A stretch of 64,000 bases of DNA, taken from the IMG/VR virus record IMGVR_UViG_3300042350_004528, positions 124,001 through 188,000 of that record; one strand, 5' to 3'. Positions 2,412-60,856 of this stretch are shown here, in pieces. The number at the start of each line of letters is the position of its first letter. Positions within the stretch are counted from its first letter, which is position 1. Below the pieces are notes generated by a model, which had not been told where the DNA came from, did no database searches, and worked only from the letters and a program-made list of their open reading frames with translations. A program made the translations under genes and the position numbers.

Positions 2412-2418
2412 TATTTAT
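2412..2418 (+). promoter_or_regulatory. Putative phage late promoter motif TATTTAT (one of about 22 copies; see findings)
   Basis: AATATTTATC 16 nt before the ATG at 2435. The same motif precedes most structural and tagged genes. Confidence 0.65.
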
Positions 2419-2434
2419 CTAAAAATAGAAAATC

Positions 2435-3151
2435 ATGTTTGGAGTTATAAAAGAAAATATTTTAAGTAAGTTGGAAAAAACTTACGCTAATGGTGATGTT
2501 TCTTCTTTTAAGAAAGAATTTAACCGTTACATTAAAACAATAAAGGAAAACAAAGACCTGAAAGAATTCTATGAGGTGTACGACTTATTCAAGCAAGTTA
2601 ATTTTGATGATATTGATGTTGCAAAAGAATTTGTAGAAGAATCTATTAGTTATCTGAAGCAATTTAATAAATCAGAAGTTGATAAATTAACTGAATTAAC
2701 TGAGACTAAACATAATTTGAATAAAAAAACGATCGAATTTAAATTAGACCAGTTAATTTTTAACGAAAATATTTCTTTAAAAGAAAAAGCGCAGTACAAA
2801 GTTGAGTTAATCAAACAAATAACTCAAAAAGAAAACGCAAAGATTGATTATAAAGATAGTTTTGAGGTACTACATAAAAAAATAAATGAGAACATTTCAA
2901 AATTAAGTAACGATCAAACACAAGCTCTTGAATTGTTCATTGAAAATGATACTAATAAGATTAACGATTTTTATCAAAACTTAATTAATAACACGGAAAC
3001 TATTGTCGAAGGTAAAATTTTAAATACTGAAAATTCTGATGTTATTAAAAAATTAGTTGAGGTTAAAAAAAGATTAAATTCTCTTAAAGCAGAAAACCCG
3101 ACTATAATTGAAATAGAAAAAATTATAAATCTTAAGGAATCGCTTAATTAA
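2435..3151 (+). CDS. Hypothetical helical protein in head module
   Basis: 238-aa Lys/Glu-rich ORF between portal and protease. Confidence 0.75.
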   Translation: MFGVIKENILSKLEKTYANGDVSSFKKEFNRYIKTIKENKDLKEFYEVYDLFKQVNFDDIDVAKEFVEESISYLKQFNKSEVDKLTELTETKHNLNKKTIEFKLDQLIFNENISLKEKAQYKVELIKQITQKENAKIDYKDSFEVLHKKINENISKLSNDQTQALELFIENDTNKINDFYQNLINNTETIVEGKILNTENSDVIKKLVEVKKRLNSLKAENPTIIEIEKIINLKESLN

Positions 3152-3225
3152 TTTGTTTTTATCGTAATTTTTGTTTATTATTATAGCGTTTATTAATAAT
3201 AAAATTAAAAAATTATGACAAAAAA

Positions 3226-3648
3226 ATGTTCAGTAAATTTGGCAAAGAGAAACAACTCTTTAAGAATGACTCCTTTAGGGTCAAGTATGGTACTATCGAT
3301 GCTTTAAAATTAAATGCGATATATGTTAATATCGAATCATGGGTTCAACCCAATGAACTAATAAATTTTGAATCAAATATACGATTGACCAGAAAAAATA
3401 TAATAAGCGAACTTAGGCAAAAAATTAATCAAGAATTATTTCATGAAAATTTCATCGTTGACTTGGATTTAAGATCATCGGGAATGATGTTAAATAAAAA
3501 AAGTTTTATGTTTATTGAGGTCACTGTATATCCGAAAAAATTTATAAAGTTTAATTCAGAACAACTAAAAAACGATATTAAAGATATTGCCGTTTCAGCT
3601 ATAAATGTTGTTCAAAAAAATAACTTTAACTTTTACTCAAAAAAATAA
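3226..3648 (+). CDS. Hypothetical protein
   Basis: 140-aa ORF, packed 3 nt before the next gene. Confidence 0.7.
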   Translation: MFSKFGKEKQLFKNDSFRVKYGTIDALKLNAIYVNIESWVQPNELINFESNIRLTRKNIISELRQKINQELFHENFIVDLDLRSSGMMLNKKSFMFIEVTVYPKKFIKFNSEQLKNDIKDIAVSAINVVQKNNFNFYSKK

Positions 3649-3651
3649 AAT

Positions 3652-4575
3652 ATGGATATGACAGAAGATTTTTTAGACGAGCTCCAAAATGAAGCCGACA
3701 AAGAACACATCAACAATATTTTACCTAAAGTCGAATCTTGGGTTACAATAGATAATAAAAATTTCTTTTTTAGCTTTAAGTGTATAGATACAATACCATC
3801 TGGTTTGTATTCTATGACATATAATGACCAACAAGGTTTCGGTGTCACTAATATGGAATACAAAAGTGAGGAATTTTTTCACCTACCATCATTACCACAC
3901 GATAAAATAATTGGAGATTTACAAAAATTTTGGGATAATAAAGATAAATTCACCAAATATAATTTAAACCCAAAACGTGGAATTATTTTGCATGGTCATC
4001 CAGGTTGTGGAAAAACATCATTAATATATTTGTTGATTGAGGAAATAAAGAAACGAAATGGCCTTTCAATTTATTTTGATGTCCCCGAAAATTGGGTCGA
4101 AATTGCCAGATTAATTAGAAAGGTTGAAAAAGAAAGACCTTTGTTATGTATCATTGAGGATATTGATTTAGTTATTGCAAAACACGGTGAGGAACCATTT
4201 TTAAATTTTCTTGATGGGCTTAATTCAATAAATAATGTTGTTTATGTGGCAACCACAAATAATATTGAAAAAATTCCAGACAGAATCAAAGATAGACCTT
4301 CTAGGTTCGATAAAAAATATGAAATAAAAAAACCAAATGATAGTGATAGGTTACTTTATTTCCAGACAAAATTATTAGAAGAGGATAAAAAGAAATACGA
4401 TCTAAAAAAATTGGTTAAGGATACAACAAACTTTACCATGGCTCATATTAAAGAAGTTTTTATTTCGCTATACATATTAGATAACCCATATGAAGAGGTT
4501 ATTTCAAGATTAAAGAAAAGTAAAATCACCGACAACCCTATTGGTTTTAACCTTAATGAAGATTATGACGCTTAA
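3652..4575 (+). CDS. AAA+ ATPase
   Basis: Walker A GHPGCGKT, Walker B CIIEDID, LNFLDG, ATTN sensor, DRPSRFD arginine finger. Confidence 0.92.
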   Translation: MDMTEDFLDELQNEADKEHINNILPKVESWVTIDNKNFFFSFKCIDTIPSGLYSMTYNDQQGFGVTNMEYKSEEFFHLPSLPHDKIIGDLQKFWDNKDKFTKYNLNPKRGIILHGHPGCGKTSLIYLLIEEIKKRNGLSIYFDVPENWVEIARLIRKVEKERPLLCIIEDIDLVIAKHGEEPFLNFLDGLNSINNVVYVATTNNIEKIPDRIKDRPSRFDKKYEIKKPNDSDRLLYFQTKLLEEDKKKYDLKKLVKDTTNFTMAHIKEVFISLYILDNPYEEVISRLKKSKITDNPIGFNLNEDYDA

Positions 4576-4622
4576 TGCGTGTTTTTAATTTACGTTAAGA
4601 TATTTATATTAAAGTTTAACCA

Positions 4623-5339
4623 ATGGCATTAAAAATTTTAAAAGAAAACGAAGAGGGTTTTGGTATAATCATTGACCATGATGCTGGATCAATCACAAGA
4701 GAAATTAACGAACAATTCTTAAACGAAAGTACGATTAGTGGTACTCTTGATTTAACAAAACCAATTATATACTATGCGACACTACAAAAATATGGTGTTG
4801 AGAATAGGAATGGTAGAATATATCCAGAGGATATTTTAAAGAAAGAGGTTGAAAGATATCGCGATGTTATAAGAAGAAACGCAAGCTTTCATGAATTAGA
4901 TCATCCACAAGAATCTGTTATATCATTAAAAGGCGGTTCACCGCATAGAATATTGGATATGTTCTGGGAAGGTAATGCGTTGATTGGTAAACTTGAGATA
5001 TTAGTATCTGATGGTTATAGAAAAAATGGCGTTATATCTTGTCATGGTGATTTAGTCGCTATGTACCTTTCATACGGTATGACACTTGGTATATCATCAA
5101 GGGGTATTGGCTCTCTTAAAAAAATTAATGGTAAAAATGTTGTTCAAAGTGATTTTGAACTTATTTGTTGGGATATAGTATCATCACCATCAACCCCAGG
5201 TTCTTATTTATACAAAAATCCTGAGGAATTTTCTAAATATGATGAGGTACTACCAGACACCGAACCACAAAAAATTATAACAACTAAAGAACCACAAGAT
5301 GAATTTTTGAGTAAATTAAGTTCATTTTTGGGTAAATAA
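4623..5339 (+). CDS. Prohead core protease (T4 gp21-like)
   Basis: NRNGRIYP, ELDHP, GISSRGIGS, WDIVSSPSTPGS motifs. TATTTAT at 4601-4607. Confidence 0.95.
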   Translation: MALKILKENEEGFGIIIDHDAGSITREINEQFLNESTISGTLDLTKPIIYYATLQKYGVENRNGRIYPEDILKKEVERYRDVIRRNASFHELDHPQESVISLKGGSPHRILDMFWEGNALIGKLEILVSDGYRKNGVISCHGDLVAMYLSYGMTLGISSRGIGSLKKINGKNVVQSDFELICWDIVSSPSTPGSYLYKNPEEFSKYDEVLPDTEPQKIITTKEPQDEFLSKLSSFLGK

Positions 5340-5391
5340 TTTGTTTTTATAAGTTTTTTTTACTATGATTGTATCAATAAAAAAAAGTAAT

Positions 5392-5631
5392 ATGGATAAA
5401 AATTTTTATTGGTACACTGTAACGGTACAGTTTGTTGTTGAAGATGAACAAACTGGTAAAATTAAAAAAGTAAAAGAAATTTACCTGGTTAAAGCTGTGT
5501 CTATCACGGACGCTGAAACACAAGTAGCTAAAGATCTGGACGGTACAATGTCAGATTACAGAATTTTAACTGCAACCGAATCAAAAATTATCAGGGTAAT
5601 TAAACCAGATGATGTTGAAATAAACGGATAA
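5392..5631 (+). CDS. DUF4494-like small protein
   Basis: WYTVTVQF...GKIKKVKEIYLVKAVSITDAE resembles the Bacteroidota DUF4494 family. ATG at 5392 preferred over 5365. Confidence 0.65.
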   Translation: MDKNFYWYTVTVQFVVEDEQTGKIKKVKEIYLVKAVSITDAETQVAKDLDGTMSDYRILTATESKIIRVIKPDDVEING

Positions 5632-5670
5632 AAAATTAAAATTTTTTTTTACTCATTAAAACCAATTACC

Positions 5671-5697
5671 AAACCCGCCCAAAAGGCGGGTTTTTTT
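5671..5697 (+). terminator. Intrinsic terminator
   Basis: AAACCCGCC-CAAAA-GGCGGGTTT followed by a T run. Confidence 0.85.
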
Positions 5698-5789
5698 ATT
5701 TTATTTATTAAGAATTACGAACTTTTGCAAAATGCTTGATATTTATTATTAGCATTATAGACAAAATAATTTTTTTAAAAAAAAATAAT

Positions 5790-7040
5790 ATGAGTAAAAC
5801 TAGCATTTTAGCCGAAACCCTAGCTGAGATACAAGAAATCAAAGAGGGTATTGAAAAGAACGCAAATCATGTTCTTAGAAGTACTTTAAAAGATGACTTG
5901 GAAGCAATCGTTAGAAAAGGCTTAAACGAAGCTGAAGAAGATATTCAGCCAAATGATATGGTTGGTGATGGTGATCCAGCCGATCAAGGAAGTGAAATTG
6001 CGAATCCAGAAGAAATGCCTTCTGATGAAACGGACATTGACCCAACTGCTGGTGTTGATGCTGGTGAAACAGAAGTGATTGATTTAACACAAGAACCTTT
6101 TGAAAAGGTTTCAGATGAGTTTGATCGCATGCAATTAACTGACGAGATCGAAATCGTTAAAACCCCAGAAGGTGGCATTCAAATTAACATTGAACCTACT
6201 GGTGCTGAAGCTGGCGCTGAAGAGATGCCCGCTGATGAACCAACTCCAGGTGAAGACGAAATTGTTGCCGCTGATGATTTAGGTGCTGAAGCTGGCGCTG
6301 AAGAGATGCCCGCTGATGAACCAACTCCAGGTGAAGATGATGAAACCATGAAAGAAAATGAAGTTGTGTATGAGATTGAAATTGCAGAAGATGCCGCAAT
6401 TTCTGAGACTACCGAGGAAGTTAAAGAAGAAGGAACCGAAGAGGTTAAAGAAACTACTGAGGAAGTTAAAGAAACTGTTGAAGAAACATTAACTCCAGAA
6501 AAAGAAATGGAAGAGGATGTTAAGCATGTTACAGCAAAAGCTCATATGAAGCACAACACAGAAGAGTTACATGAGAGTTTAGTGGCTACTAGAAAGAAGT
6601 TACAGGCTTTAATGACTGAAAATAAAATTAAGTCTCAAGAACTAGACAATGTTAACACTTTAGTTGAAGAGTTTAAAAATGCTGAGGTTGAATATAAATC
6701 AGCAATTAAAAATCTCAAAGGTCAATTACAAGAAGTTGCATTGTTCACATCAAACTTAACTTACGCTGTTAAATTAATGACTGAAAATTCAACTACTAAG
6801 GATGAAAAATTAGATATCCTTAAGAGATTTGATTCAGCTAAAACTTTGACAGAATCAAGAGAGGTTTTCAATAGTTTAGAATCGTTATTTAAAACAAGCA
6901 AAAACACGGTTGAAAAAACTATCGAAGAAAGAGTTCTTGAAACACCTAAGGCCAGTGGCGCTTCAAATTTAAATGAGTCCACAGCCTACAAGAATCCACA
7001 ACTCGAAAGAATGTTGGATATCATTGGAAAAATTAAATAA
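5790..7040 (+). CDS. Prohead scaffold/core protein (T4 gp22-like)
   Basis: Very acidic, coiled-coil C-terminal half, located between protease and capsid genes, many (L/I)xE sites. ATG at 5790 preferred. Confidence 0.75.
   Translation: MSKTSILAETLAEIQEIKEGIEKNANHVLRSTLKDDLEAIVRKGLNEAEEDIQPNDMVGDGDPADQGSEIANPEEMPSDETDIDPTAGVDAGETEVIDLTQEPFEKVSDEFDRMQLTDEIEIVKTPEGGIQINIEPTGAEAGAEEMPADEPTPGEDEIVAADDLGAEAGAEEMPADEPTPGEDDETMKENEVVYEIEIAEDAAISETTEEVKEEGTEEVKETTEEVKETVEETLTPEKEMEEDVKHVTAKAHMKHNTEELHESLVATRKKLQALMTENKIKSQELDNVNTLVEEFKNAEVEYKSAIKNLKGQLQEVALFTSNLTYAVKLMTENSTTKDEKLDILKRFDSAKTLTESREVFNSLESLFKTSKNTVEKTIEERVLETPKASGASNLNESTAYKNPQLERMLDIIGKIK
6201..6337 (+). repeat. 56-bp exact direct repeat inside scaffold gene (6201-6256 and 6282-6337)
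   Basis: Encodes GAEAGAEEMPADEPTPGED twice, 81 nt apart (in frame). Confidence 0.9.
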
Positions 7041-7073
7041 TAATAAAATTAAAAACTTAAAAAAATACTAAAA

Positions 7074-8660
7074 ATGGGTGCATTATTAGAATCAGGAAAA
7101 GTTGGTAACGTAAGTTTAAATCATTTAAAAACTGTACGTACTGACGTAATTAACAGATGGGACAGCTTAGGTCTTTTAGAAGGCTTAAATGGACATCGTA
7201 AAGAGAACATCGCTCAGTTGTTCGAAAACCAAGCTTCATACATGTTGAACGAAGCTACATCATTAGGTGTTGAAGGTTCTTTCGAAACTGTTGTGTTCCC
7301 TATCGTGAGAAGAGTATTCTCAAAATTATTAGCAAACGAAATCGTTTCTGTACAAGCTTTGAACTTACCTATCGGTAAATTGTTCTACTTCGTACCGAAA
7401 ATCGGTAGATCAGAATTTGGTAAATCAGGTGGCCCAGAAAGCAATGACCCAAGAAACCAAATGCAGATGGCTGAAGCTTTCAGTGCTAACAAGAATACAT
7501 ACGATGCTTTCTACGGAGAGGATGGTTTGTATGATAAATCAAAAGGTGAGGCTACAACAGCTACTGGTACAACTCATACCGCTAGCTTGTTTAAGTTCAG
7601 CACATCTGGTTTCGCGGTAAAAGCTGGTACCACAATTACATCTGGTACAACTGAAATCGTTAAAGTTACTTTAACTGGTGCTGGAAACTTCGAAAATGCT
7701 GAAGAATTCTTAAGCACAATGGCAGTTTCTTATACTGGTGGTACTTTGGATTATTATTTCCCATCTCAGAAATATGGTACACAGTTAATGGATGGTTCAG
7801 GTGTAACTTATATCGCAGTTGTTGCCCCAGATAACGACAACGTTGATTTGTCTGACATCACTGTAACTTACAAGACTTACGATTCATTAGAATTGTCTGA
7901 CTCAATGGGTGAAGTAAGCTTCGAACTTCAATCTGTAACCGTATCGGTTATCGAAAGAAAGTTAAGAGCACAATGGTCTCCAGAATTAGCTCAAGACGTG
8001 TCAGCGTTCCATAACATTGACGCGGAAGCTGAATTAACAGCTTTATTGTCTGAGCAAGTTGCTGCTGAGATCGACCGTGAGATCTTAAGAGACTTACGTA
8101 GAGGTGCTGCTTGGAGATTGTCATGGGATTACGCTGGTGTTACTGGCCGTGGTATCGACACAACCAACGCAGGTGCATTCTATACTCAAAAAGAATGGAA
8201 CCAAACCTTGATCACTGCGATCAATCAAGTTTCTGCTCAAATCCACAAAGCAACTCTTCGTGGTGGCGCAAACTGGATCGTATGTTCAGCTGAGGTTTCT
8301 GCAATTTTTGATGATTTAGAATACTTCCACGTATCTAACGCTGCTCCTGAGCAAGATAAATTCAACATGGGTATTGAAAGAGTGGGTTCACTTTCTGGTC
8401 GTTACCAGGTTTACCGTGATCCTTACTTCCCAGCTGACACAATCTTGATGGGACACAAAGGAACTTCATTGTTAGACACAGGTTACATTTACGCACCATA
8501 CGTGCCAATGCAATTAACCCCTACAATGTATAATCCGTTTACCTTCGCTCCAGTTAAAGGTATCATGACTCGTTACGCTAAGAAAATGGTTAACAACCGT
8601 TTCTATGGTGTGATCAAAGTTAAGAATATCGTTAGCTTCGGTATCGATGGTTTCAGATAA
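7074..8660 (+). CDS. Major capsid protein (T4 gp23-like)
   Basis: RKLRAQWSPELAQD, HNIDAEAEL, EIDREIL, GYIYAPYVP, PFTFAPVKGIMTRYA. Strongly biased codon usage. Confidence 0.97.
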   Translation: MGALLESGKVGNVSLNHLKTVRTDVINRWDSLGLLEGLNGHRKENIAQLFENQASYMLNEATSLGVEGSFETVVFPIVRRVFSKLLANEIVSVQALNLPIGKLFYFVPKIGRSEFGKSGGPESNDPRNQMQMAEAFSANKNTYDAFYGEDGLYDKSKGEATTATGTTHTASLFKFSTSGFAVKAGTTITSGTTEIVKVTLTGAGNFENAEEFLSTMAVSYTGGTLDYYFPSQKYGTQLMDGSGVTYIAVVAPDNDNVDLSDITVTYKTYDSLELSDSMGEVSFELQSVTVSVIERKLRAQWSPELAQDVSAFHNIDAEAELTALLSEQVAAEIDREILRDLRRGAAWRLSWDYAGVTGRGIDTTNAGAFYTQKEWNQTLITAINQVSAQIHKATLRGGANWIVCSAEVSAIFDDLEYFHVSNAAPEQDKFNMGIERVGSLSGRYQVYRDPYFPADTILMGHKGTSLLDTGYIYAPYVPMQLTPTMYNPFTFAPVKGIMTRYAKKMVNNRFYGVIKVKNIVSFGIDGFR

Positions 8661-8690
8661 TCGTAACTGAATAGGATAAACCTTAAATAG

Positions 8691-8719
8691 AAAAGGGACT
8701 CAATTGAGTCCCTTTTTTT
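8691..8719. terminator. Bidirectional intrinsic terminator
   Basis: Perfect palindrome AAAAGGGACTCAATTGAGTCCCTTTT between convergent genes. Confidence 0.9.
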
Positions 8720-9563
8720 ATTGATGGTATTTTTGTTTATAAAAATTTAAGAGATGTTCCTTGTCTTGTTTAAATGATTCCGTTATCAACTTTTTATTAT
8801 CCTTTGGTAAAAAATAATATTTTTGGCCTAGAGATTCAATTAGTTTAACAGCTGTTGTTAAACAAATATCAACATCAAGTATAGAAACATATTCACGTTT
8901 AGAGTGCATATTATAGTAACCAACAGAATAATTTACACAAGAAAAGTCATACAACGATTTTAACGCAGAAACATCTGTATACGGATGATAACCAAGACTT
9001 TTTATACCATACCCAGGTAAATTTGATTCAAAAATGGGATTAATTTTATCAAAAAATTCGCTATCGACAGCAAATAATCTAATACCATCAGAATAATGGC
9101 TCACCCAGTTATTAAATGGTGCATCAAATTGTATTGCATATCCCACATTTTCAAAAAATTCTGAGTCGGATAAATATGAACCTAAACAACCAACCTCTTC
9201 TGAAACAAAAAAAGCTGCTTTAATATTTTCAATACGATCTAATAATTCTAGACAAACGAATACACCAGCTTTATTATCCCCACCAATACCAGTTTGTTCA
9301 CCATATTTATTAATTGCTGTTAGTATAAAGTTATCCTCATGAACCGTAAACTCTTCCAAAGGATGTACGGTGTCAATATGTGCAACAACACAAGGAAAAT
9401 ACTCAGCATTACCCTTTACAGCGTAAATATTACCATATTTATCAACATAGTTCGGAATATTGCGTTCATTTAGTGCATTTACAATATAATCCCTCATTCT
9501 ATCTTCAGCACCATATACAGTTGGATTAGACAAGGTTTCAATTAGTCTATTTATATTAATCAT
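8718..9563 (-). CDS. M20/M28-family Zn-dependent peptidase
   Basis: AHIDTVH, GGDNKAG, SEEVG, QFD and a C-terminal YNMH metal-ligand pattern. Start moved to MININRL (9563), overlapping the upstream stop. Confidence 0.85.
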   Translation of the reverse strand: MININRLIETLSNPTVYGAEDRMRDYIVNALNERNIPNYVDKYGNIYAVKGNAEYFPCVVAHIDTVHPLEEFTVHEDNFILTAINKYGEQTGIGGDNKAGVFVCLELLDRIENIKAAFFVSEEVGCLGSYLSDSEFFENVGYAIQFDAPFNNWVSHYSDGIRLFAVDSEFFDKINPIFESNLPGYGIKSLGYHPYTDVSALKSLYDFSCVNYSVGYYNMHSKREYVSILDVDICLTTAVKLIESLGQKYYFLPKDNKKLITESFKQDKEHLLNFYKQKYHQ

Positions 9564-31558: not shown

Positions 31559-31604
31559 TATTATCGAAATTTAAACTACTTATAAATAGTCCAAATTCCG
31601 ATAA
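31559..31604 (-). promoter_or_regulatory. Hairpin covering the fibre gene translation start, with TATTTAT motif in its loop
   Basis: Minus strand TTATCGGAATTT-ggactatttataagtagttt-AAATTTCGATAA-taa-ATG. Confidence 0.65.
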
Positions 31605-34086: not shown

Positions 34087-34117
34087 CAAATCTAAGCAAA
34101 ATCTTGACACAATGCAA
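34087..34117 (-). promoter_or_regulatory. Bacteroidota-type promoter of clpC
   Basis: Minus strand TTG-N20-TAGATTTG, 22 nt upstream of the ATG. Confidence 0.65.
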
Positions 34118-34595: not shown

Positions 34596-34639
34596 TCGAA
34601 TTATTTGATATTTATCTTTAAGTAAAACTATACAAATAA

Positions 34640-36325: not shown

Positions 36326-36373
36326 CCATAAAATGCATTTGATTTTTTTATCTTTTTTGTCTATTATTGTGGT

Positions 36374-38156: not shown

Positions 38157-38189
38157 ATAAAGTAATCTATTTATAATTAAATAAGATTT

Positions 38190-38923: not shown

Positions 38924-38939
38924 ACTATTTATTAACATA

Positions 38940-39683: not shown

Positions 39684-39734
39684 TAAAATTGATGATATTT
39701 ATTATAAGAATAATTAACTAAAAATTTTTAGGAT

Positions 39735-46138: not shown

Positions 46139-46203
46139 ATCCTTTTTATTATAAATATCTCTACAATCGCATTTGTTCAGATATTTATAACTAAATTTGT
46201 AAA

Positions 46204-47183: not shown

Positions 47184-47220
47184 GATCTATATTTTAATAT
47201 AAATATCTTAAATAATAATA

Positions 47221-48142: not shown

Positions 48143-48176
48143 CATATAAATATATGAAGCTTTAAAATGTAATCAA

Positions 48177-48779: not shown

Positions 48780-48805
48780 ACTTTTTTACATATAAATATC
48801 AACAA

Positions 48806-49382: not shown

Positions 49383-49430
49383 CAAAATTAATAAAAGGTT
49401 TGGTAATAACCAAATTTTTTCATACCTTTG
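49383..49430. promoter_or_regulatory. Overlapping divergent Bacteroidota-type promoters
   Basis: Plus: TTTG (49399) N20 TACCTTTG (49423-49430). Minus: TTTG (49414-49411) N20 TAATTTTG (49390-49383). The two -33 boxes form the palindrome TTTGGT-AATA-ACCAAA. Confidence 0.7.
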
Positions 49431-52193: not shown

Positions 52194-52270
52194 AATGTGA
52201 TATTTTAATGATAAATAGTTTGCTTTTAATTAAAGTTTCGTATATTTACATATAAATAAACCTTACCACT

Positions 52271-52625: not shown

Positions 52626-52670
52626 AAATCTTTTACTAAACGGTGATATATTTATTCCAAAAATAAATAA

Positions 52671-52907
52671 ATGCACGGAAAAACCATAAAACAACTTTTA
52701 GCATTAAAAGAAGAACTCAATTCAATTTTAGAAACTCGTAGTGAGAAATTATTAGAATCAACCAAATCATCTTATCTTCAAGAAGAATTACAAAGAAACA
52801 TTGTCGATTACATCTCAGAAACAATTGACCAGATCGATATGATTATGGACAACATCGAAGGTGGTGAATATGATGAGAACGATAATGAAGAGTTAGATGA
52901 TTATTAA
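52671..52907 (+). CDS. Small acidic helical protein
   Basis: TATTTAT at 52649-52655. LKE/LLE/LQE sites. Confidence 0.65.
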   Translation: MHGKTIKQLLALKEELNSILETRSEKLLESTKSSYLQEELQRNIVDYISETIDQIDMIMDNIEGGEYDENDNEELDDY

Positions 52908-52991: not shown

Positions 52992-53027
52992 ATTTGCGCT
53001 GGATATTTATCTAAGTAACACATTTCA

Positions 53028-53645: not shown

Positions 53646-53646
53646 T

Positions 53647-54741
53647 TTAAGACCATTTGTTTAACATTTGGTAATTGTGAACTTCGTTCCATTTATTTGC
53701 GTCATAATTACCCCCTTTCCAATATTGGAATGAACCTATTCTTATATCACCCCCAGCTGTTAAGCCCAATCTGAAAATATTATCAAATATCAGTTCAGTT
53801 GTTCCAACTTGTTGTACATAATTTTCATTACTATCATCAGCAATAAATAGTTGACCAGCATCGTTTCTACCAAAAATAAGGGTTATCCAAGTATTAACTT
53901 GTGCACTCATTGATACGGTATCAGCACCCATAGTAAATTGGTATACGTTTGTAGCAATATCATATCTAAGTCTCGTAATCCCCCCATCAGCATAAATTAT
54001 TGCTGGTGAATTACTGGCCTGCGGTGTGAATCTGAGCCTCAACGCAAACATAAAAGACTCACCAGATGAAGTATTAAGGGGTGCTATATATGAAGCCGCA
54101 TTGGATGAATCTAAATCTATGTATAAATTTGCCGCATTAAATCTTCTATTATAAGTTGAATTATCGCCCGCGGTTTGTATTGATGTGGAGATATTTCCAG
54201 CGACATTTTTTGTAAACCATCTTTCTATTACACCATCAGTTGCTTGAACCAAATCGTAACATTTTGTTAAATTAGTCTCAAGAATGTCGCAATTAAGATT
54301 ACCGAAATCAATATTTAACATTAAATTAGGGGTGTCAGCGTATTTGTATTTTGATAAATCAGCCAAAAAATGATTTAAATTTTCATTTTCAATAACGTAT
54401 CTTTTGGCAACATCCACGTCACTATAATACGTGCCATCAATTTTTATTGAATGCAAACTATTAATTATGTGTACAATTTCCGCATTGGTTTTACCAGTGA
54501 CGTGATATGTTGGAATCGTGGGCTCACCGCCAACACCTTCTACATTTCCTCTTGATACGATATAATATTTTTCGCCACCAAAATTACCCGCAGGATAACC
54601 TGGTCTCCAAGTAAGACCCGTTGAATTTCCGTCTTGAAAATTAAACCCTTCATTAATGTGGCCATAGCAATATTTACCAATTCTATGATATTGATCAATC
54701 GTTGGTGCGGTACCGTATTGTATAGTTACTGGAACTGACAT
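53647..54741 (-). CDS. Putative virion protein with degenerate LamG-like domain
   Basis: Architecture resembles the first half of 34640..36325 (NLMLNIDFG, NTWITLIFGR). TATTTAT at 54758-54764 (minus). Confidence 0.5.
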   Translation of the reverse strand: MSVPVTIQYGTAPTIDQYHRIGKYCYGHINEGFNFQDGNSTGLTWRPGYPAGNFGGEKYYIVSRGNVEGVGGEPTIPTYHVTGKTNAEIVHIINSLHSIKIDGTYYSDVDVAKRYVIENENLNHFLADLSKYKYADTPNLMLNIDFGNLNCDILETNLTKCYDLVQATDGVIERWFTKNVAGNISTSIQTAGDNSTYNRRFNAANLYIDLDSSNAASYIAPLNTSSGESFMFALRLRFTPQASNSPAIIYADGGITRLRYDIATNVYQFTMGADTVSMSAQVNTWITLIFGRNDAGQLFIADDSNENYVQQVGTTELIFDNIFRLGLTAGGDIRIGSFQYWKGGNYDANKWNEVHNYQMLNKWS

Positions 54742-54804
54742 AATTTAATATTTTACAATAAATAGTATTAAAGTTTAAAATAACTCGAGATATTTATATT
54801 ATAT

Positions 54805-55518
54805 ATGAATTTAAACGAGCAGATATTAAGAATGAAAACCATGATCGGTTTATCCGAGGTTACCATTCCACAATCAATTAAAAAATCGGTTGGTGATGTT
54901 TTGTTTGGTTCAAATCCAATAATTGCAAAAATTCAAAACAAACCAATTGAAAAGAATACCCCATACGAGGATAACCTGGTTGACAAAATAAAGGATTGGA
55001 CATTTCAATCAACAGAAAAATCCGAGATGGGCGTTGTATCAACAATATCCGATTTAATTAAACTAAAAAAATATTTTCCAGAGGTTCTCAACCCACCGTA
55101 TGGTGAAAAAGTTTACAGAGGAACATCGGTTAAATTACCAGAGCTATCCAAATTCATAAAAGAAAACCCAGAACATGATGTTTTGGATAACGGTGCGGTT
55201 AAATTTAAAACACCCTACCAGTATACCCCAAAAAGAGAAGTTAGTAGTTGGAGTGCATCCTTGTTCTACGCATCATCATTTCAGGGCAAATCATTCGAGA
55301 GTGCTGTGAATGTCCCAGTTATTTTTGAAACAACTGTCGATGACACATTCATTATGAATCCAAAAGTTATGAACATCATATTTAAATCAACGGGCGGTGT
55401 TCACCAGGATTTTATAAGGGACGAGGACGAGATTATGAAGTACAACCCGAGTGGTACTTACCATCTAATTTTGTCAGAAGACGAATACGAAATATTCGCA
55501 CCAAATGCCGAGGTCTAA
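54805..55518 (+). CDS. Putative ADP-ribosyltransferase (R-S-E type) with N-terminal tag
   Basis: KVYRG, VSSWSASLFYASSF and RDEDEI follow the R / SxS / ExE order. N-terminus LNEQILRMKTMIGL. Confidence 0.6.
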   Translation: MNLNEQILRMKTMIGLSEVTIPQSIKKSVGDVLFGSNPIIAKIQNKPIEKNTPYEDNLVDKIKDWTFQSTEKSEMGVVSTISDLIKLKKYFPEVLNPPYGEKVYRGTSVKLPELSKFIKENPEHDVLDNGAVKFKTPYQYTPKREVSSWSASLFYASSFQGKSFESAVNVPVIFETTVDDTFIMNPKVMNIIFKSTGGVHQDFIRDEDEIMKYNPSGTYHLILSEDEYEIFAPNAEV

Positions 55519-56708: not shown

Positions 56709-56732
56709 AAAAAGGGGCGAAAGCCCCTTTTT
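56709..56732. terminator. Bidirectional terminator
   Basis: AAAAAGGGGC-GAAA-GCCCCTTTTT. Confidence 0.9.
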
Positions 56733-56742
56733 CTTTTTATCT

Positions 56743-57360
56743 TTAATCTTCTCCGCCCCAATCTTTATAATCACCAAATCTTTCGTTGTCTTCATAACCA
56801 GCGTTGTACGCTTCGATTTCTTCTGGTGTTAAATCGGTGATTCTCTCACCTTTGTAAGTTCCTTCTGGATACTTATGTGGGCTCTTGGGTCTTCTGTAAT
56901 ATGAATCGGCGTGACCGCGATCATATGGTGATCCGTGCGAATCATCGTATTTCTCACTTCTACCCTCCTGAAATATTTCAGTTCTTGGTTCATCGTAATG
57001 ATCCAACTTACCTATTGGGTAACGTTCGCCCGTCTCAGCGTTGTATTTAATGATTATCTTACCATCATCACTATCACCTATAAAATAATGTACATTATCA
57101 TCAGCTAAACTATAATATAATGGTCTGTCATAATCGTCAAACTCTCTTTGAACAACTTTTTCACCACTTGCGGATTCGATCGCGGCTTTTTCGAAATCGA
57201 AATCACTTTCCATTTCCTCGCCACCTCTTTCGGAATTATAGTTAAAAATATCATCGGTGTATGCATTTGGATTATCCACCTTTGATAGATCAATTTCTTC
57301 ATTAAGACCCATTATTTTGCGGAGTCTCGCAATTTCTTCATTTAATGTATTCTTTTTCAT
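56743..57360 (-). CDS. Tagged multi-module protein (LNEEIARLRKIMGL)
   Basis: Start MKKNTLNEE at 57360, TATTTAT at 57380-57386. C-terminal small domain HGSPYDRGHADSYY...AYNAGY. Confidence 0.75.
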   Translation of the reverse strand: MKKNTLNEEIARLRKIMGLNEEIDLSKVDNPNAYTDDIFNYNSERGGEEMESDFDFEKAAIESASGEKVVQREFDDYDRPLYYSLADDNVHYFIGDSDDGKIIIKYNAETGERYPIGKLDHYDEPRTEIFQEGRSEKYDDSHGSPYDRGHADSYYRRPKSPHKYPEGTYKGERITDLTPEEIEAYNAGYEDNERFGDYKDWGGED

Positions 57361-57415
57361 AGAAAAAAACAATTTATTGATAAATAGTTTGTCAAATCCA
57401 AAAATATTTATGAAC

Positions 57416-57724
57416 ATGGTAAAACTTTTTGAGAGAATACATATCCCATTGTGGATCGCAAAGGATATGTTCTGGATGTTGGGTCAGGGCGAACTCTCAT
57501 TGGCTTTCGCGATACCAACCATAATATTATCAACAATACTCATAACAGTAAAACAGGGGTCGGAAAGGTGGCTCGAGATGATGATGGCCTTTTGGTTATC
57601 AGCCAATACCTTATGGATGTCCCACGAGCTTTTTCATACGGACACAAAAGAAATTGCATTAACCTGTTTTTTATTTGGCATTTTAACAATTCCAATCTAT
57701 TTATTAAAGATAAAAGAAGAATAA
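57416..57724 (+). CDS. Small multi-pass membrane protein
   Basis: HIPLWIAKDMFWM..., about four hydrophobic segments. Start at 57410 or 57416. Confidence 0.65.
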   Translation: MVKLFERIHIPLWIAKDMFWMLGQGELSLAFAIPTIILSTILITVKQGSERWLEMMMAFWLSANTLWMSHELFHTDTKEIALTCFLFGILTIPIYLLKIKEE

Positions 57725-57732
57725 AACTAGTT

Positions 57733-59307
57733 ATGAAACTAACTGAGGAAATAAAGAAAATGCAATCCATGATGGGCATTATGTCCGAGGATGTGAAAAT
57801 ATACGCAAACGGTGTTGGATCTGAGGTGTTTAATGATAACGAACATTACGGAAAGGTTGATGATATTAATTTAAATGACACCATAGCAAATGAACCGTTT
57901 AAGGATATGGAATACATGGATAAAAGTTCCAATGTCGATGATATGGTTCAAGCCTTGAAATCTGGTGAAGAGCTGCCACCAATACTTGTTATTCAACACC
58001 CCTTCGACCAATCAAAATATTTGGTTGTCGATGGAAACCATAGAAGATACGCATATGACCGCGCAGGTGCTGATAAGATTCCAGCCGTTGTGATTAAACC
58101 AGAGGATGTTTTGTTAATGCAATCCGATTGGGGTGATCCAGAGGAAAAGGCGATCAGATTATCTGATGTTATATCCGATCCAGAGTTGTTTGCTCGAGAA
58201 AACACAAGAATGTTAATTGACAAGTATTTTGTTAAACCAGACGGATCACATGAGTTCGAATTGAATGAAAATTTATATGAGGAAAAGAAAAAAGCCGATC
58301 GTTGTTTAAGAATAGCGAGAAGAAAATACAGCAAACCATCAGCATATAGATCTGGTGCAATCGTTCAATGCAGAAGAGGAAAGATATGGAGAGGTTTGAA
58401 GGAAGAGGAGATCCAAATGATTGACAACGCACCAGAGGAAATGCAAGGTTTGATCGCCAAGGCTCACGATGCTTTGACGTGGAAGAGGGGTCGAAAAGAA
58501 TATGCTCCAGATTTTAATGAACTTCAAACATGGGTGGATGCTTATTTGGAGACTGACGGTGGAATGCATGAAGCGAAGAAAACCGATTTCTCAAAGGAGA
58601 AAAAGAGCGGACTTCACGGATGGTTTTCAAGAAGAGGTGGTGGCGGAAGCAAAGGATGGGTTGATTGCAACACATGCAGAAAAGTTGACGGAAAGAAAAA
58701 ATGCAAGGCTTGTGGAAGACAAAAGGGTGAGGTGAGAGCCAAGTACCCATCATGCAGACCAACACCAGCATCATGCGGAACACCAGGAAAGGGAAAATCT
58801 TGGGGCAAGACAAAGGAAGAGGGTTACAGCTTGAATGAAGCCAAGGAGATGAAGAGAGTTGCTTTGCTTTTCATTGTGATTGACAACGAAGCGTTGTTGT
58901 TCAAGAGAAGCGAAGACGAAACAACAAATCCAGGAAAATACGGAATGCTTGGTGGTGGAATTGAAAAGAATGAAACGCCAGAGGAAGCAATCGTGAGAGA
59001 GATCAGAGAAGAAGCTGGTGTTGAGTTGAAATCATTCAAACCACTGAAGAAATATATTTACAACAACGAGTGTGAATTAAACGTATTCTACACAAACGAA
59101 TTTCCAATTGATGATGTTGTGCTTGACAAGAACGAACACACATCGTACAAATATTTCACGATGGAACAATTGATAGATATGGATCCAAAGGATATGATTG
59201 GTTCCAACAAAGAAATCGCGAAGGATTACAACGAGATCGCAAACAAGAAAAAGAAATTGGAAGAAGAGATAGAGAGAATAAAAGCTACGATGAAGATTCT
59301 TATTTAA
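57733..59307 (+). CDS. Tagged polyprotein-like fusion: ParB/Srx domain, two Cys-rich basic modules, NUDIX hydrolase
   Basis: LPPILV...VDGNHRR (ParB). PSAYRSGAIVQC and GWVDCNTC...CGR...YPSCRP modules. Nudix box GGGIEKNETPEEAIVREIREEAG. Tags at both termini. Start at 57733. Confidence 0.8.
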   Translation: MKLTEEIKKMQSMMGIMSEDVKIYANGVGSEVFNDNEHYGKVDDINLNDTIANEPFKDMEYMDKSSNVDDMVQALKSGEELPPILVIQHPFDQSKYLVVDGNHRRYAYDRAGADKIPAVVIKPEDVLLMQSDWGDPEEKAIRLSDVISDPELFARENTRMLIDKYFVKPDGSHEFELNENLYEEKKKADRCLRIARRKYSKPSAYRSGAIVQCRRGKIWRGLKEEEIQMIDNAPEEMQGLIAKAHDALTWKRGRKEYAPDFNELQTWVDAYLETDGGMHEAKKTDFSKEKKSGLHGWFSRRGGGGSKGWVDCNTCRKVDGKKKCKACGRQKGEVRAKYPSCRPTPASCGTPGKGKSWGKTKEEGYSLNEAKEMKRVALLFIVIDNEALLFKRSEDETTNPGKYGMLGGGIEKNETPEEAIVREIREEAGVELKSFKPLKKYIYNNECELNVFYTNEFPIDDVVLDKNEHTSYKYFTMEQLIDMDPKDMIGSNKEIAKDYNEIANKKKKLEEEIERIKATMKILI

Positions 59308-59413
59308 CCTTCGCAAAGACAAACGCTACCTTCACATTCTGGGCAGCAAGTTCCTGGTTCAACCACGGGTAAAAACATTAAAGACAATTTTTATTATAGA
59401 AAAAAAGGATCGA

Positions 59414-59965
59414 TTAGTTCGATCCATTTTCATTTATATTCTTTTCAACATTCTGTTTCATCCCGCGAACCATTTTAAGAAGACTGGAGTTATCGGTCTT
59501 AACGATGGTTGTCACCTGTGGTTCAGGTTCACGTGGCATTATCATGGCTGATACCTCACCGTCCCCAGAACCAGAACCGCCAGTTTCCATGCGAAGAGTT
59601 CTTTCGAAACGAACTGGTGAGCTGGTTGAGGTTGAAACAACTTTATTATGTGTCTTTTGAGCTTCACTCTCCATATTGGTCAACATCTCAAGAATTTCCT
59701 TCTCACGAGATATGAATCTGTCCGTGCAAACGGTTTGATTGCTGATAACAATATCATTAAGTTCATTCACCCTGTCACTAAGGCTCTTTATCATAACCTT
59801 TTGGTTTTCCACCTTGTGTAATAATTCCTCATTATCTTGGGTAAGACCTTCGATAAGCTTAGGGCCAATTGAGATAATCACAATGGACAAAAGAACAATC
59901 CCAAGAGCAGCAAGACGCTGTTTCATGGAGATCTTTGAGATGATTTCTGAAATATATTTAAACAT
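59414..59965 (-). CDS. Membrane-anchored coiled-coil protein
   Basis: TM LAALGIVLLSIVIISIG followed by a coiled coil. TATTTAT at 59984-59990 (minus). Confidence 0.65.
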   Translation of the reverse strand: MFKYISEIISKISMKQRLAALGIVLLSIVIISIGPKLIEGLTQDNEELLHKVENQKVMIKSLSDRVNELNDIVISNQTVCTDRFISREKEILEMLTNMESEAQKTHNKVVSTSTSSPVRFERTLRMETGGSGSGDGEVSAMIMPREPEPQVTTIVKTDNSSLLKMVRGMKQNVEKNINENGSN

Positions 59966-60120
59966 GTCTCTATTTGTTTAAATATAAATATTCGTGTTTA
60001 CAGTAAATTGTTTACTGTAAACTAAATTAAAAGCAACGGGGGTAAAAATTACCATAATGTGTCACCATCCCCAGGAGGGTGTTCGGAATAAAGGGTTTGT
60101 AAAAATTGTGGGGTTATGAA

Positions 60121-60804
60121 TTATATTCCAACGGTTGGTGAGTCCATGTTCTCACTTAAACCATAATGTTTCTCAACCAAAGTTTCAAAGTAATTTAAAA
60201 GTCCTTCTTTACCAATACCACTTTCTTTGGCTTTCGCAATGAAGTCATCAGCACTAGCACCAATTCCACCTTGAATCCAGTCCACATCAGCAGCTGTGAT
60301 TATTTTTTCATTGATTGGTTCCTCACTCATTCTATTTAAAAAACTATTTAATTTTCCATTACTATAAGTTAAACCAAGTTCTTTGGTTAACTTTTCAAGT
60401 ACTCTAACCACTTGAGTTTTATATGGGTCTGAATAAGCTCTAACAAAAGATCCAGAGCCACGATTAAACATGAAACCGTATATTCTTTGATCTATTTGAC
60501 TAATCACATATTTTTTCTTCTCTTCTGGTTCTGTTGGTATTGACCCAGTATATTTTTGGTCTGACTCAACAAAATCGGTTACCAGTTTATTAAAAGCTTC
60601 CACAAATTCTTTTGCTTTTGTTGGATTTTCTTGCCAAGAATCATTACGAGCACTATTATTAATTGATAAACCTTTAATTATTGGTTCCATACGTCCAAAG
60701 CCATCATCAATTATTTTAACGGAATCAACGAACTCGTTTAGATTCTCATTAAGGCCCATCATCTGGCGTATTCTTAAAACTTCTTCATTTAAGGTATTAT
60801 TCAT
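60121..60804 (-). CDS. Tagged protein (LNEEVLRIRQMMGL)
   Basis: TATTTAT at 60826-60832 (minus). Confidence 0.75.
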   Translation of the reverse strand: MNNTLNEEVLRIRQMMGLNENLNEFVDSVKIIDDGFGRMEPIIKGLSINNSARNDSWQENPTKAKEFVEAFNKLVTDFVESDQKYTGSIPTEPEEKKKYVISQIDQRIYGFMFNRGSGSFVRAYSDPYKTQVVRVLEKLTKELGLTYSNGKLNSFLNRMSEEPINEKIITAADVDWIQGGIGASADDFIAKAKESGIGKEGLLNYFETLVEKHYGLSENMDSPTVGI

Positions 60805-60856
60805 GGTAAAATCAATTAATTTACTATAAATATCTGAAAAATGGATAAAAAAAACA

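What the first reader, a model, noticed from the sequence alone, without database searches (positions are those of the whole stretch)
2412..60832. Putative late promoter TATTTAT reads as the reverse complement of the T4 late box
Seen: (GA/AC/AA)TATTTAT lies on the coding strand, mostly 7-45 nt before starts. Plus copies: 2412, 4601, 5740, 34609, 38168, 38926, 39696, 46182, 52649, 53004, 54791, 57405, 57698. Minus copies: 31582, 46151, 47199, 48146, 48792, 52211, 54758, 57380, 59984, 60826. It is absent before thyA, dNMP kinase, helicase and clpC. Known: the T4 gp55 late promoter is TATAAATA, whose reverse complement is TATTTATA. Inference: a phage sigma with altered -10 specificity defines the late regulon.
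Basis: partly seen in the sequence, partly recalled or inferred. Interest (0 to 1): 0.6.

Follow-up and report, generated by a model that had tools for sequence, protein, structure and literature searches.

The report
Conserved phage late-gene promoter box TATTTAT
A seven-base box, TATTTAT, sits just ahead of the virion and lysis genes of this 299-kb T4-related freshwater phage and many of its relatives; it is most likely the late promoter, read by a diverged phage sigma factor, a new variant of a known scheme.

Summary
All 23 listed copies exist, and each is followed on the same strand by an ATG-started ORF.

- **Enrichment.** Genome-wide, 50 of 360 upstream regions carry TATTTAT, against 13.2 ± 3.1 in dinucleotide shuffles.
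- **Strand bias.** The box is strongly strand-specific, and every one-base variant is far less concentrated upstream of starts.
- **Genes served.** Protease, the scaffold-like/major-capsid operon, sheath, tube, baseplate wedge, adaptor, endolysin, and a 5316-aa collagen-like protein.
- **Other promoters.** About 80 other genes have the Bacteroidota host promoter, TTTG-N20-TAnnTTTG.
- **Conservation.** The box holds its place before orthologous genes in relatives with about 55% capsid identity. It also occurs in cultured Flavobacterium phage immuto and Microcystis phage Mel-JY01.
- **Spacing.** The distance to ATG is bimodal (4-5 nt, or 12-20 nt), and an A-rich patch lies 5-7 nt after the box. 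This fits a start site there and a -10-only promoter.
- **Candidate reader.** A conserved 237-aa protein encoded 10 kb upstream of the window has a sigma region-2 domain. Orthology to gp55 is not shown, and no gp33 or sliding clamp was found.

The "reverse complement" reading is formally true but unhelpful. In the same orientation the box matches the T4 box at 6 of 8 positions. No transcript-start data could be obtained.

The parts
2412..2418 (+). TATTTAT box, 16 nt before ATG of 238-aa ORF 2435-3151 (unknown function, follows portal gene)
   Evidence: 20 of 20 orthologues in relatives carry the box
4601..4607 (+). TATTTAT box, 15 nt before prohead (head maturation) protease gene 4623-5339
   Evidence: 55 of 56 orthologues carry the box
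5740..5746 (+). TATTTAT box, 43 nt before 416-aa ORF 5790-7040, which is followed without a box by the major head protein gene 7074-8660 (operon); a hairpin plus T-run terminator lies just upstream
   Evidence: 60 of 63 orthologues of the 416-aa gene carry the box, 1 of 78 major-capsid orthologues does
31582..31588 (-). TATTTAT box, 24 nt before the 5316-aa (G-T-S)n collagen-like protein gene 15607-31557
34609..34615 (+). TATTTAT box, 24 nt before virion structural protein gene 34640-36325
38168..38174 (+). TATTTAT box, 15 nt before 137-aa ORF 38190-38603
38926..38932 (+). TATTTAT box, 7 nt before 247-aa ORF 38940-39683 (phrog_36119, unknown)
39696..39702 (+). TATTTAT box, 32 nt before 122-aa ORF 39735-40103
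46151..46157 (-). TATTTAT box, 12 nt before 179-aa ORF 45599-46138; back-to-back with the box at 46182
46182..46188 (+). TATTTAT box, 15 nt before 132-aa ORF 46204-46602
47199..47205 (-). TATTTAT box, 15 nt before 194-aa ORF 46599-47183; an imperfect GC-rich hairpin with a T-run lies upstream (seen by eye; not detected by the strict scan)
48146..48152 (-). TATTTAT box, 100 nt before 268-aa ORF 47239-48045; the stretch between folds into a stable structure (-24.7 kcal/mol, z -3.5), with no Rfam match
48792..48798 (-). TATTTAT box, 12 nt before 200-aa ORF 48177-48779
52211..52217 (-). TATTTAT box, 17 nt before 391-aa ORF 51018-52193
52649..52655 (+). TATTTAT box, 15 nt before 78-aa ORF 52671-52907
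53004..53010 (+). TATTTAT box, 17 nt before 205-aa ORF 53028-53645; an imperfect GC-rich hairpin with a T-run lies upstream (seen by eye; not detected by the strict scan)
54758..54764 (-). TATTTAT box, 16 nt before 364-aa ORF 53647-54741; back-to-back with the box at 54791
54791..54797 (+). TATTTAT box, 7 nt before 237-aa ORF 54805-55518
57380..57386 (-). TATTTAT box, 19 nt before an ATG at 57360 (205-aa ORF 56743-57360); back-to-back with the box at 57405
57405..57411 (+). TATTTAT box, 4 nt before ATG 57416 (102-aa ORF); this is the leaderless spacing
57698..57704 (+). TATTTAT box, 28 nt before ATG 57733 of the ParB-like/NUDIX protein (524 aa, ends 59307)
59984..59990 (-). TATTTAT box, 18 nt before 183-aa ORF 59414-59965
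60826..60832 (-). TATTTAT box, 21 nt before 227-aa ORF 60121-60804
34087..34094 (-). Contrast: host-type -7 box TAGATTTG, 22 nt before the ClpC-like ATPase gene 31608-34064 (not part of the TATTTAT regulon)
49423..49430 (+). Contrast: host-type -7 box TACCTTTG, 18 nt before DNA helicase gene 49449-50834
36362..36369 (+). Contrast: third box type TATTATTG, 4 nt before thymidylate synthase gene 36374-37411

Best explanation
TATTTAT (extended form (G/A)(A/C)TATTTAT(A/T)) is the -10-type core of the late promoters of a 299-kb T4-related phage of a Bacteroidota host. It works alone, without a -35/-33 element.

Transcription most likely starts at an A 5-7 nt downstream of the box. This gives either leaderless mRNAs (ATG 4-5 nt after the box) or short 6-14 nt leaders.

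The host RNA polymerase core is redirected to these boxes by a phage-encoded sigma-like protein. The best candidate is the conserved 237-aa protein at genome positions 113621-114334, about 10 kb upstream of the window. It is made from a host-type promoter operon, and its gene ends exactly where the first TATTTAT-driven structural operon begins. Early genes use the host sigma-A promoter TTTG-N20-TAnnTTTG.

**Shown:** enrichment, strand and position bias, association with virion and lysis genes, conservation in relatives, and co-occurrence with the sigma-like gene.

**Inferred:** the start-site position, late timing, and which protein reads the box.
For: **Statistics.** See the observation check.

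**Logo.** In 434 unique sites from this genome and 80 related loci, all information lies in the heptamer plus A at -1. An A-rich patch (0.69-0.77 A) follows 5-7 nt after the box. Nothing is conserved between -40 and -20.

**Spacing to ATG.** It is bimodal: 83 sites at 4-5 nt, almost none at 0-3, few at 7-10, and a broad peak at 12-20. That pattern is expected if the transcript starts 5-6 nt after the box. F. johnsoniae promoters have the same 4-5 nt gap between the -7 box and the start site (PMC6847099).

**Genes behind the box.** Prohead protease, the operon ending in the major head protein, a virion structural protein, baseplate wedge, tail tube, tail sheath, a head-tail adaptor-like protein and endolysin.

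**Conservation in relatives.** The box is present before 55 of 56 protease, 60 of 63 416-aa-gene, 20 of 20 238-aa-gene and 32 of 41 portal orthologues. It is present before only 1 of 78 capsid, 2 of 52 and 2 of 38 orthologues of internal genes.

**Cultured phages.** The same box precedes structural operons in Flavobacterium phage immuto and Microcystis phage Mel-JY01. In Mel-JY01 it lies farther upstream, with a separate GGAG ribosome site in between.

**The candidate sigma.**
- 15 of 25 family members hit Pfam Sigma70_r2, best E 1.5e-5.
- The top ~20 structural matches of the N-terminal domain are sigma region-2 domains, Z 6-8.4.
- The nearest Atlas clusters are viral 'RNA polymerase sigma factor family' proteins, score 0.98.
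- It is present in 5 of 5 large related contigs and in all 18 loci that reach far enough. Homologues occur in immuto and Mel-JY01.
- A complex model places its invariant helix (residues 65-79) on the beta-prime clamp helices of F. johnsoniae (residues 276-319). The score is 0.68 and the best control 0.00; this mark was reached by 51 of 78 solved complexes and 2 of 108 mismatched pairs. The runs share at least 69% of contacts, and partner pLDDT is at least 75.
Against: - There are no transcript 5' ends and no time course.
- The query itself scores below Pfam's cut-off for Sigma70_r2 (16.7 against 24 bits).
- PDB sequence-profile and Foldseek searches gave nothing significant. The VIA Z values are in the range that helical domains can reach by chance.
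- The complex pass may only reflect memory of solved sigma/beta-prime complexes.
- Three functionally named genes behind a box are not late-type. The RNR small subunit and the tRNA nucleotidyltransferase also have a TAnnTTTG box beside it; the third is SAM decarboxylase.
- A 484-kb relative with a 29%-identical sigma homologue shows no TATTTAT near its capsid gene.
Confidence: 0.72

Rival explanations
1. The box is a promoter, but it is read by a host sigma factor, either the primary sigma-A with relaxed specificity or a host alternative sigma. A phage accessory protein might help, and no phage sigma would be needed.
For: The box shares T1, A2, T5 and T7 with the host -7 element TAnnTTTG, and it sits at the same inferred distance from the start (PMC6847099). 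The sigma-like protein is only sub-threshold in Pfam.
Against: The same box is used by a Microcystis (cyanobacterial) phage and by Flavobacterium phages. Their hosts have very different primary sigma specificities, which points to a factor carried by the phages. No -33 element accompanies the box, whereas the roughly 80 host-type promoters in the same genome have a strong one. Single-base variants towards the host box (TATTTGT, TATTTTT) are not enriched.
Confidence: 0.12
2. The reader of the box is the other phage sigma, the 265-aa RpoD/RpoS-like protein at genome positions 12235-13032 (regions 1.2, 2 and 4), and not the 237-aa protein.
For: It is an unambiguous sigma-70 family member (Sigma70_r2 48.8 bits, Sigma70_r4 53.2 bits). 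A TATTTAT box follows its gene.
Against: The complete genomes of immuto and Mel-JY01 use the box but have no Sigma70_r2 match at E <= 1. The protein was found in only 2 of 5 large related contigs, although those are partial. A sigma with an intact region 4 would be expected to need a -35-type element, and none is seen.
Confidence: 0.08
3. The heptamer acts at the RNA level, as a translation enhancer, a ribosome landing site in a host without Shine-Dalgarno use, or an RNA-processing site, and not as a promoter.
For: The spacing to the ATG is tight (a peak at 12-20 nt). The box is on the sense strand and the host phylum lacks Shine-Dalgarno sites (PMC6847099).
Against: - The box is missing before internal genes of operons that still need translation, such as the major head protein (1 of 78 orthologues).
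- 83 sites have the ATG only 4-5 nt after the box, too close for an upstream ribosome site.
- In Mel-JY01 a separate GGAG lies between the box and the ATG at variable distance.
- Boxes follow hairpin plus T-run terminators in 5 of 51 cases, against 1.4% of random windows, and they occur back-to-back in divergent gaps.
Confidence: 0.05
4. The box is a chance product of AT-rich intergenic sequence.
For: Intergenic DNA here is 70% A+T.
Against: The count lies about 12 standard deviations above dinucleotide shuffles, with 28 to 0 strand bias for the extended form. One-base variants show no comparable enrichment. The position is conserved across orthologues whose flanks have diverged.
Confidence: 0.01

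Closest known systems
T4-type late promoters (TATAAATA; NATAAATA in cyanomyoviruses) read by gp55 with gp33 and the gp45 sliding clamp
   Same: It is a single AT-rich box of 7-8 bp with no -35 element, lying ahead of virion and lysis genes. The phage has T4-type capsid, portal, prohead protease, sheath, tube and baseplate-wedge proteins. In the same orientation 6 of 8 positions are identical. The proposed reader is a small, diverged phage protein with a sigma region-2 domain (PMC2988020, PMC2984593).
   Different: The central dinucleotide is TT, not AA, and the T4 box itself is avoided on the sense strand (3 sense, 15 antisense). The candidate sigma is longer (237 against 185 aa), has a second helical domain, and cannot be aligned to gp55 with confidence. 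No gp33 homologue and no gp45-type or beta-type clamp was detected, so coupling to replication through a clamp is unsupported here.
Bacteroidota primary-sigma promoters (-33 TTTG / -7 TAnnTTTG)
   Same: The inferred box-to-start distance is the same (4-5 nt). T1, A2, T5 and T7 are shared, and both classes include leaderless arrangements. The same genome holds about 80 textbook examples of this class before its early genes (PMC6847099).
   Different: Position 6 is A rather than T, there is no G at position 8, and there is no -33 TTTG. The two box types serve different gene sets.
Phage-encoded alternative sigmas that switch host polymerase to late genes (for example Bacillus phage SPO1 gp33/gp34; my own knowledge, not tested here)
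   Same: The logic of a host-promoter early class followed by a phage-sigma late class.
   Different: Those sigmas recognise two-part promoters, whereas here only one box is seen.

Membership tests
T4-type late promoter system | Box TATAAATA on the non-template strand | tested here: not met
   Sense TATAAATA 3 against antisense 15 in co-directional intergenic regions. The enriched box is TATTTAT(A), which matches at 6 of 8 positions in the same orientation.
T4-type late promoter system | Single -10-type box, no -35 element | tested here: met
   In the logo of 434 sites, information is at most 0.07 bit per position from -40 to -20. Only a weak T-rich patch is seen at -17..-14.
T4-type late promoter system | Lies before virion and lysis genes of a phage with T4-type structural genes | tested here: met
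   Protease, capsid operon, sheath, tube, baseplate wedge, adaptor and endolysin. The capsid protein hits 2588 mostly T4-like phage records.
T4-type late promoter system | gp55 homologue encoded | tested here: inconclusive
   phrog_234 gives E 0.028 on the 237-aa ORF. T4 gp55 as a protein query finds nothing. Profile against profile gives E 0.016, probability 2.8%, over the region-2.1/2.2 equivalent only. The T4 late-complex chain 7d7d_F matches at Z 5.5, below generic sigma-2 domains.
T4-type late promoter system | gp33 co-activator encoded | tested here: not met
   phrog_254 has no match at E <= 10 in the complete genome. A very diverged homologue cannot be excluded.
T4-type late promoter system | gp45-type sliding clamp as activator | tested here: not met
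   phrog_223, PF02916 and PF02768 have no match. A very diverged clamp cannot be excluded.
T4-type late promoter system | Box at about -13 to -6 from the mapped start; late timing | not testable with these tools
Indirect support comes from the A-rich patch and the leaderless ATGs 5-7 nt after the box.
Bacteroidota sigma-A promoter (-33/-7) | -7 box TAnnTTTG | tested here: not met
   The box has A at position 6 and A/T at position 8. Variants TATTTTT and TATTTGT are not enriched. About 80 other promoters in the genome do meet this feature.
Bacteroidota sigma-A promoter (-33/-7) | -33 TTTG about 20 nt upstream | tested here: not met
   No conservation is seen at that distance in 434 sites.
Sigma-70 family (the 237-aa candidate) | Region-2 domain | tested here: met
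   15 of 25 members match Sigma70_r2 at E < 0.1, best 1.5e-5; the query scores 16.7 bits, below the 24-bit cut-off. VIA matches to sigma-2 domains of ShbA, SigK, SigW, CnrH, SigC and sigma-E reach Z 6.8-8.4 over residues 12-121. Atlas score 0.98 to viral sigma clusters.
Sigma-70 family (the 237-aa candidate) | Binds the beta-prime clamp helices | tested here: met
   In silico only. Score 0.68, best control 0.00; this mark was reached by 51 of 78 solved complexes and 2 of 108 mismatched pairs. Runs share at least 69% of contacts, and partner pLDDT is at least 75. The pass may come from memory of solved sigma complexes.
Sigma-70 family (the 237-aa candidate) | Region-4 domain | tested here: inconclusive
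   The C-terminal domain 138-237 matches sigma-H and sigma-E region 4 at Z 5.2-5.4, but unrelated helical proteins score the same. There is no Pfam region-4 hit in 25 members and no -35 element in the logo.

The most novel reading that the evidence does not exclude
The 237-aa protein is a natural single-chain late sigma. It would combine a gp55-like region-2 domain with a flap-binding domain of the region-4/gp33 type, and would drive -10-only late promoters without a sliding clamp. That would be the 'fused late-transcription sigma' which the T4 literature notes is not known to exist (PMC2988020). It would mark a large, environmentally common branch of T4-related phages that keeps, or reinvented, an undivided late sigma with a switched central dinucleotide specificity (TT for AA).
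Probability: 0.2. Interest if true: 0.7.

Novelty: new variant of a known kind. Interest (0 to 1): 0.55.

Why it matters
- **Annotation.** The box gives a simple, testable rule for late transcription units in a large and widespread group of uncultured freshwater and marine phages. More than 598 capsid relatives were found in IMG/VR, and more than 1100 relatives of the sigma-like protein. It also corrects gene starts.
- **Spread of the T4-style scheme.** The one-box late promoter extends beyond the gp55/gp33/gp45 phages, with a different box and apparently different protein parts.
- **Experimental access.** Two cultured phages, immuto and Mel-JY01, offer a way to test the rule.
- **Tool value.** A seven-base promoter paired with one small sigma, orthogonal to the unusual Bacteroidota promoter, could be useful for gene expression in Flavobacteriia.

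Tried and rejected
- **Read evidence.** The look-up of sequencing runs found 22 metatranscriptome runs, freshwater, riverine or lake, best share 0.45.
- The Rfam search was started at 7100 to stay beside them. It returned nothing.
- **gp55 searches.** T4 gp55 as a protein query against the genome found nothing. phrog_12791 also found nothing.
- **Structure searches with the sigma-like family.** A PDB sequence-profile search gave only chance-level rows. Foldseek against PDB gave no match at E <= 0.001.
- **gp33 comparison.** hhalign of the family against T4 gp33 aligned only a 10-residue stretch.
- **484-kb relative LR756508.** It has no TATTTAT near its capsid gene. A possible variant, TATTTAA, occurs 4 times sense and 2 antisense, too few to judge.
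- **Terminators.** A strict hairpin plus T-run upstream of boxes occurs at only 5 of 51 sites against 1.4% of random windows. This is supportive but weak.
- **Literature.** Full-text searches for the heptamer or octamer with phage, promoter or late terms, and for Mel-JY01 or immuto promoters, found no description of this box. The Ma-LMM01 transcriptome paper concerns an unrelated phage.
- **Function of genes behind the boxes.** Pfam and PHROG scans of most small window genes behind the box found nothing. The 'late' label for them rests on the box alone.

Full report
**What the window is.** The window is positions 124001-188000 of a 298,833-bp virus record that CheckV rates as complete. The genome has 34% G+C.
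- Its major head protein is of the T4 gp23 type. It hits 2588 phage records, mostly T4-like; the nearest are two uncultured huge phages and Microcystis phage Mel-JY01 at 33-34% identity.
- The window encodes portal, prohead protease, major head protein, a ClpC-like ATPase, a virion structural protein, thymidylate synthase, dNMP kinase and a helicase.
- Elsewhere the genome encodes tail sheath, tail tube, baseplate wedge, an adaptor-like protein and endolysin.

Each is followed on its own strand by an ATG-started ORF of at least 78 aa. The gap is 4-43 nt, except for 48146(-), where a folded 100-nt stretch intervenes.
- Using a simple ORF map of the whole genome (360 ORFs), TATTTAT occurs in 50 of the 360 regions at -60..-1. 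Dinucleotide-preserving shuffles give 13.2 ± 3.1, maximum 24.
- In gaps between co-directional genes it is 42 sense to 10 antisense. The extended form [GA][AC]TATTTAT is 28 to 0.
- Among all orderings of the same seven letters it has the highest share of copies just upstream of starts (28%, against 3-14% for the others).
- Most single-base variants reach only 2-12%; TACTTAT, part of the early-promoter consensus, reaches 18%. All seven positions therefore matter.
- The T4 box TATAAATA is under-represented on the sense strand (3 against 15).

**A second, much larger promoter class identifies the host.** About 80 genes carry TTTG, about 20 nt, then TAnnTTTG. They are densest in a block of small ORFs at 186-218 kb, whose edge is the right end of the window. 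This is the published -33/-7 promoter of the Bacteroidota primary sigma (PMC6847099). In the window it precedes the helicase and ClpC-like genes. The phage therefore starts with host-type promoters, and TATTTAT is a distinct class.

**What lies behind the box.** Genes with a recognisable function behind a TATTTAT box are:
- prohead protease;
- the 416-aa gene that heads the major-head-protein operon;
- a virion structural protein;
- the 5316-aa collagen-like protein;
- baseplate wedge, tail tube, tail sheath and an adaptor-like protein;
- endolysin, which has two boxes.

There are three exceptions. The RNR small subunit and the tRNA nucleotidyltransferase also have a host-type box directly beside the heptamer. 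The third is SAM decarboxylase. Many small window genes behind the box have no known relatives.

**Conservation.** Eighty related loci were fetched with the capsid protein: four at 74-82% identity, the rest at about 55%. Flanking sequences differ between loci.

| Gene | Orthologues carrying the box |
|---|---|
| Prohead protease | 55 of 56 |
| 416-aa gene | 60 of 63 |
| 238-aa gene | 20 of 20 |
| Portal | 32 of 41 |
| Major head protein | 1 of 78 |
| 140-aa gene | 2 of 52 |
| 88-aa gene | 2 of 38 |

This is the pattern of a signal at the head of transcription units, not of one needed at every gene. The same box precedes structural operons in the cultured Flavobacterium phage immuto. It also precedes 10 of 36 annotated starts near the capsid gene of Microcystis phage Mel-JY01. 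There it lies 20-40 nt upstream, with a separate GGAG between the box and the ATG.

**Anatomy and inferred start site.**
- Pooling 434 distinct sites, all information lies in the heptamer, a preference for A (never T) just before it, and A after it. There is no -35 or -33 element.
- In sites with a leader, positions 5-7 after the box are 69-77% A.
- The distance from box to ATG is bimodal: 83 sites at 4-5 nt, almost none at 0-3, few at 7-10, and a broad peak at 12-20.
- The ATGs of the first group fall on the A-rich patch of the second. Both point to a start 5-6 nt after the box, giving leaderless or short-leader mRNAs.
- The host-type boxes show the same 4-nt class in this genome. F. johnsoniae promoters have 4-5 nt between the -7 box and the start.
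- This geometry, the absence before internal genes, and the Mel-JY01 arrangement argue against an RNA-level or translational role.
- Boxes also stand back-to-back in divergent gaps (46151/46182, 54758/54791, 57380/57405). They sometimes stand directly after hairpin plus T-run terminators: 5 of 51 against 1.4% of random windows.

**Relation to the T4 box.** TATTTATA is indeed the reverse complement of TATAAATA. But the T4 box is palindromic apart from its centre. In the same orientation the two agree at 6 of 8 positions and differ only in the central AA/TT. All T4-family late boxes described so far keep ATAAATA (PMC2984593). This lineage is therefore a variant with a changed centre, not an inverted promoter.

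**Who reads it.** The genome has two sigma-like genes.

*The 265-aa protein (12235-13032, minus strand).* It is a plain RpoD/RpoS-like sigma with regions 1.2, 2 and 4. It is about 35% identical to bacterial and phage sigmas.

*The 237-aa protein (113621-114334).* It belongs to a family of more than 1100 environmental proteins, many on contigs of 100-360 kb.
- 15 of 25 sampled members touch Pfam Sigma70_r2, although the query stays below the cut-off.
- An AlphaFold model (mean pLDDT 71) has an N-terminal domain whose best structural matches are almost all sigma region-2 domains, Z 6-8.4. The sigma chain of the T4 late-transcription complex matches at Z 5.5.
- The Atlas places it among viral sigma-factor clusters.
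- A complex model puts its invariant helix on the clamp helices of F. johnsoniae beta-prime. The score is 0.68 and the best control 0.00; this mark was reached by 51 of 78 solved complexes and 2 of 108 mismatched pairs. Runs share at least 69% of contacts, and partner pLDDT is at least 75. This shows likeness to sigma, and may come from memory of solved complexes.
- It is found in 5 of 5 large related contigs and in all 18 loci that extend far enough, always near the head genes. Homologues occur in immuto and Mel-JY01.

Those two complete genomes have no canonical Sigma70_r2 match at all. The 265-aa sigma is therefore not needed for the box. In this genome and in immuto, the first TATTTAT box of a structural operon lies immediately after the stop codon of the sigma-like gene. 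The gene itself sits in an operon headed by a host-type box.

I therefore take the 237-aa protein as the probable reader, at about 0.6. Its orthology to gp55 is not shown. Its C-terminal domain is only weakly region-4-like. No gp33 and no sliding clamp was detected.

**Limits.**
- No experimental transcript ends or timing were available.
I worked beside them afterwards, apart from one protein-family call whose reference overlapped them by 13 bases through an oversight.
- My ORF map uses the first ATG of each frame, so some distances are approximate. In several cases the box suggests a better start (57360, 57416, 57733).

**Verdict.** This is a real, conserved regulatory box, most likely the late promoter of a large T4-related phage group, with a likely dedicated phage sigma. 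It is a new variant of a known kind. I found no description of it in the searchable literature.

Noticed in passing
window 15607-31557 (-): A 5316-aa ORF that is 78% Ser/Gly/Thr, built of Gly-X-Y triplets (mostly G-T-S; runs of up to 109 triplets) between small globular N- and C-terminal parts. This is a giant collagen-like protein behind a TATTTAT box. The long ORF on the opposite strand (16412-30751) is a by-product of the repeats.
   Followed up: partly
window 61800-64000, continuing to genome 186-218 kb: A block of dozens of small ORFs, each with its own near-identical promoter (T-run, TTTGCA, about 20 nt, TAtcTTTG, A/C-rich leader of about 20 nt). This is a textbook Bacteroidota -33/-7 promoter and marks the early region and the host phylum.
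   Followed up: yes
window 36362-36369 (+); genome 97.7, 98.5, 277, 281, 286, 289 kb: A third box, TATTATTG, often after a T-run, occurs 7 times sense and 0 antisense upstream of starts, including 4 nt before thyA. It may be a middle class or a weak variant of the host box. The dNMP kinase gene has a similar TATTATTC.
   Followed up: partly
window 48046-48140 (-): The 100-nt stretch between the box at 48146 and the 268-aa gene folds stably (-24.7 kcal/mol, z -3.5, 0 of 200 shuffles as good) and has no Rfam match. It could be a regulatory leader or a small RNA.
   Followed up: partly
genome-wide and in L015-L094: Both promoter classes include many cases with the ATG 4-5 nt after the box, so leaderless mRNAs appear common in this phage group. 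In F. johnsoniae most host transcripts are leadered (PMC6847099).
   Followed up: partly
genome 12235-13032 (-), outside the window: A second, canonical RpoD/RpoS-like sigma (265 aa; regions 1.2, 2, 4) is encoded by the phage. Its target promoters are unknown, and it is absent from immuto and Mel-JY01.
   Followed up: partly
window 31608-34064 (-): A phage-encoded full-length ClpC/ClpB-like AAA+ ATPase (818 aa; phrog_4871, E 3e-253) lies behind a host-type promoter, between the giant late gene and a late virion gene.
   Followed up: no
window 2000-9000: Parts of this stretch are held by 22 metatranscriptome runs from 19 studies of fresh, river and lake water (best share of words 0.45). The phage or close kin is therefore transcribed in such waters. 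The data are contigs only.
   Followed up: partly
window 7028-7069: The A-rich gap before the major head protein gene tripped the read tool's filter, which by its own message also trips by chance. Nothing was laid.
   Followed up: no
genome about 237.5 kb and 264.8-265.6 kb, outside the window: Upstream stretches there end in tRNA-like T-arm sequences (GGTTCGAA(C/T)CC), suggesting a tRNA cluster. No tRNA lies in the window itself.
   Followed up: no
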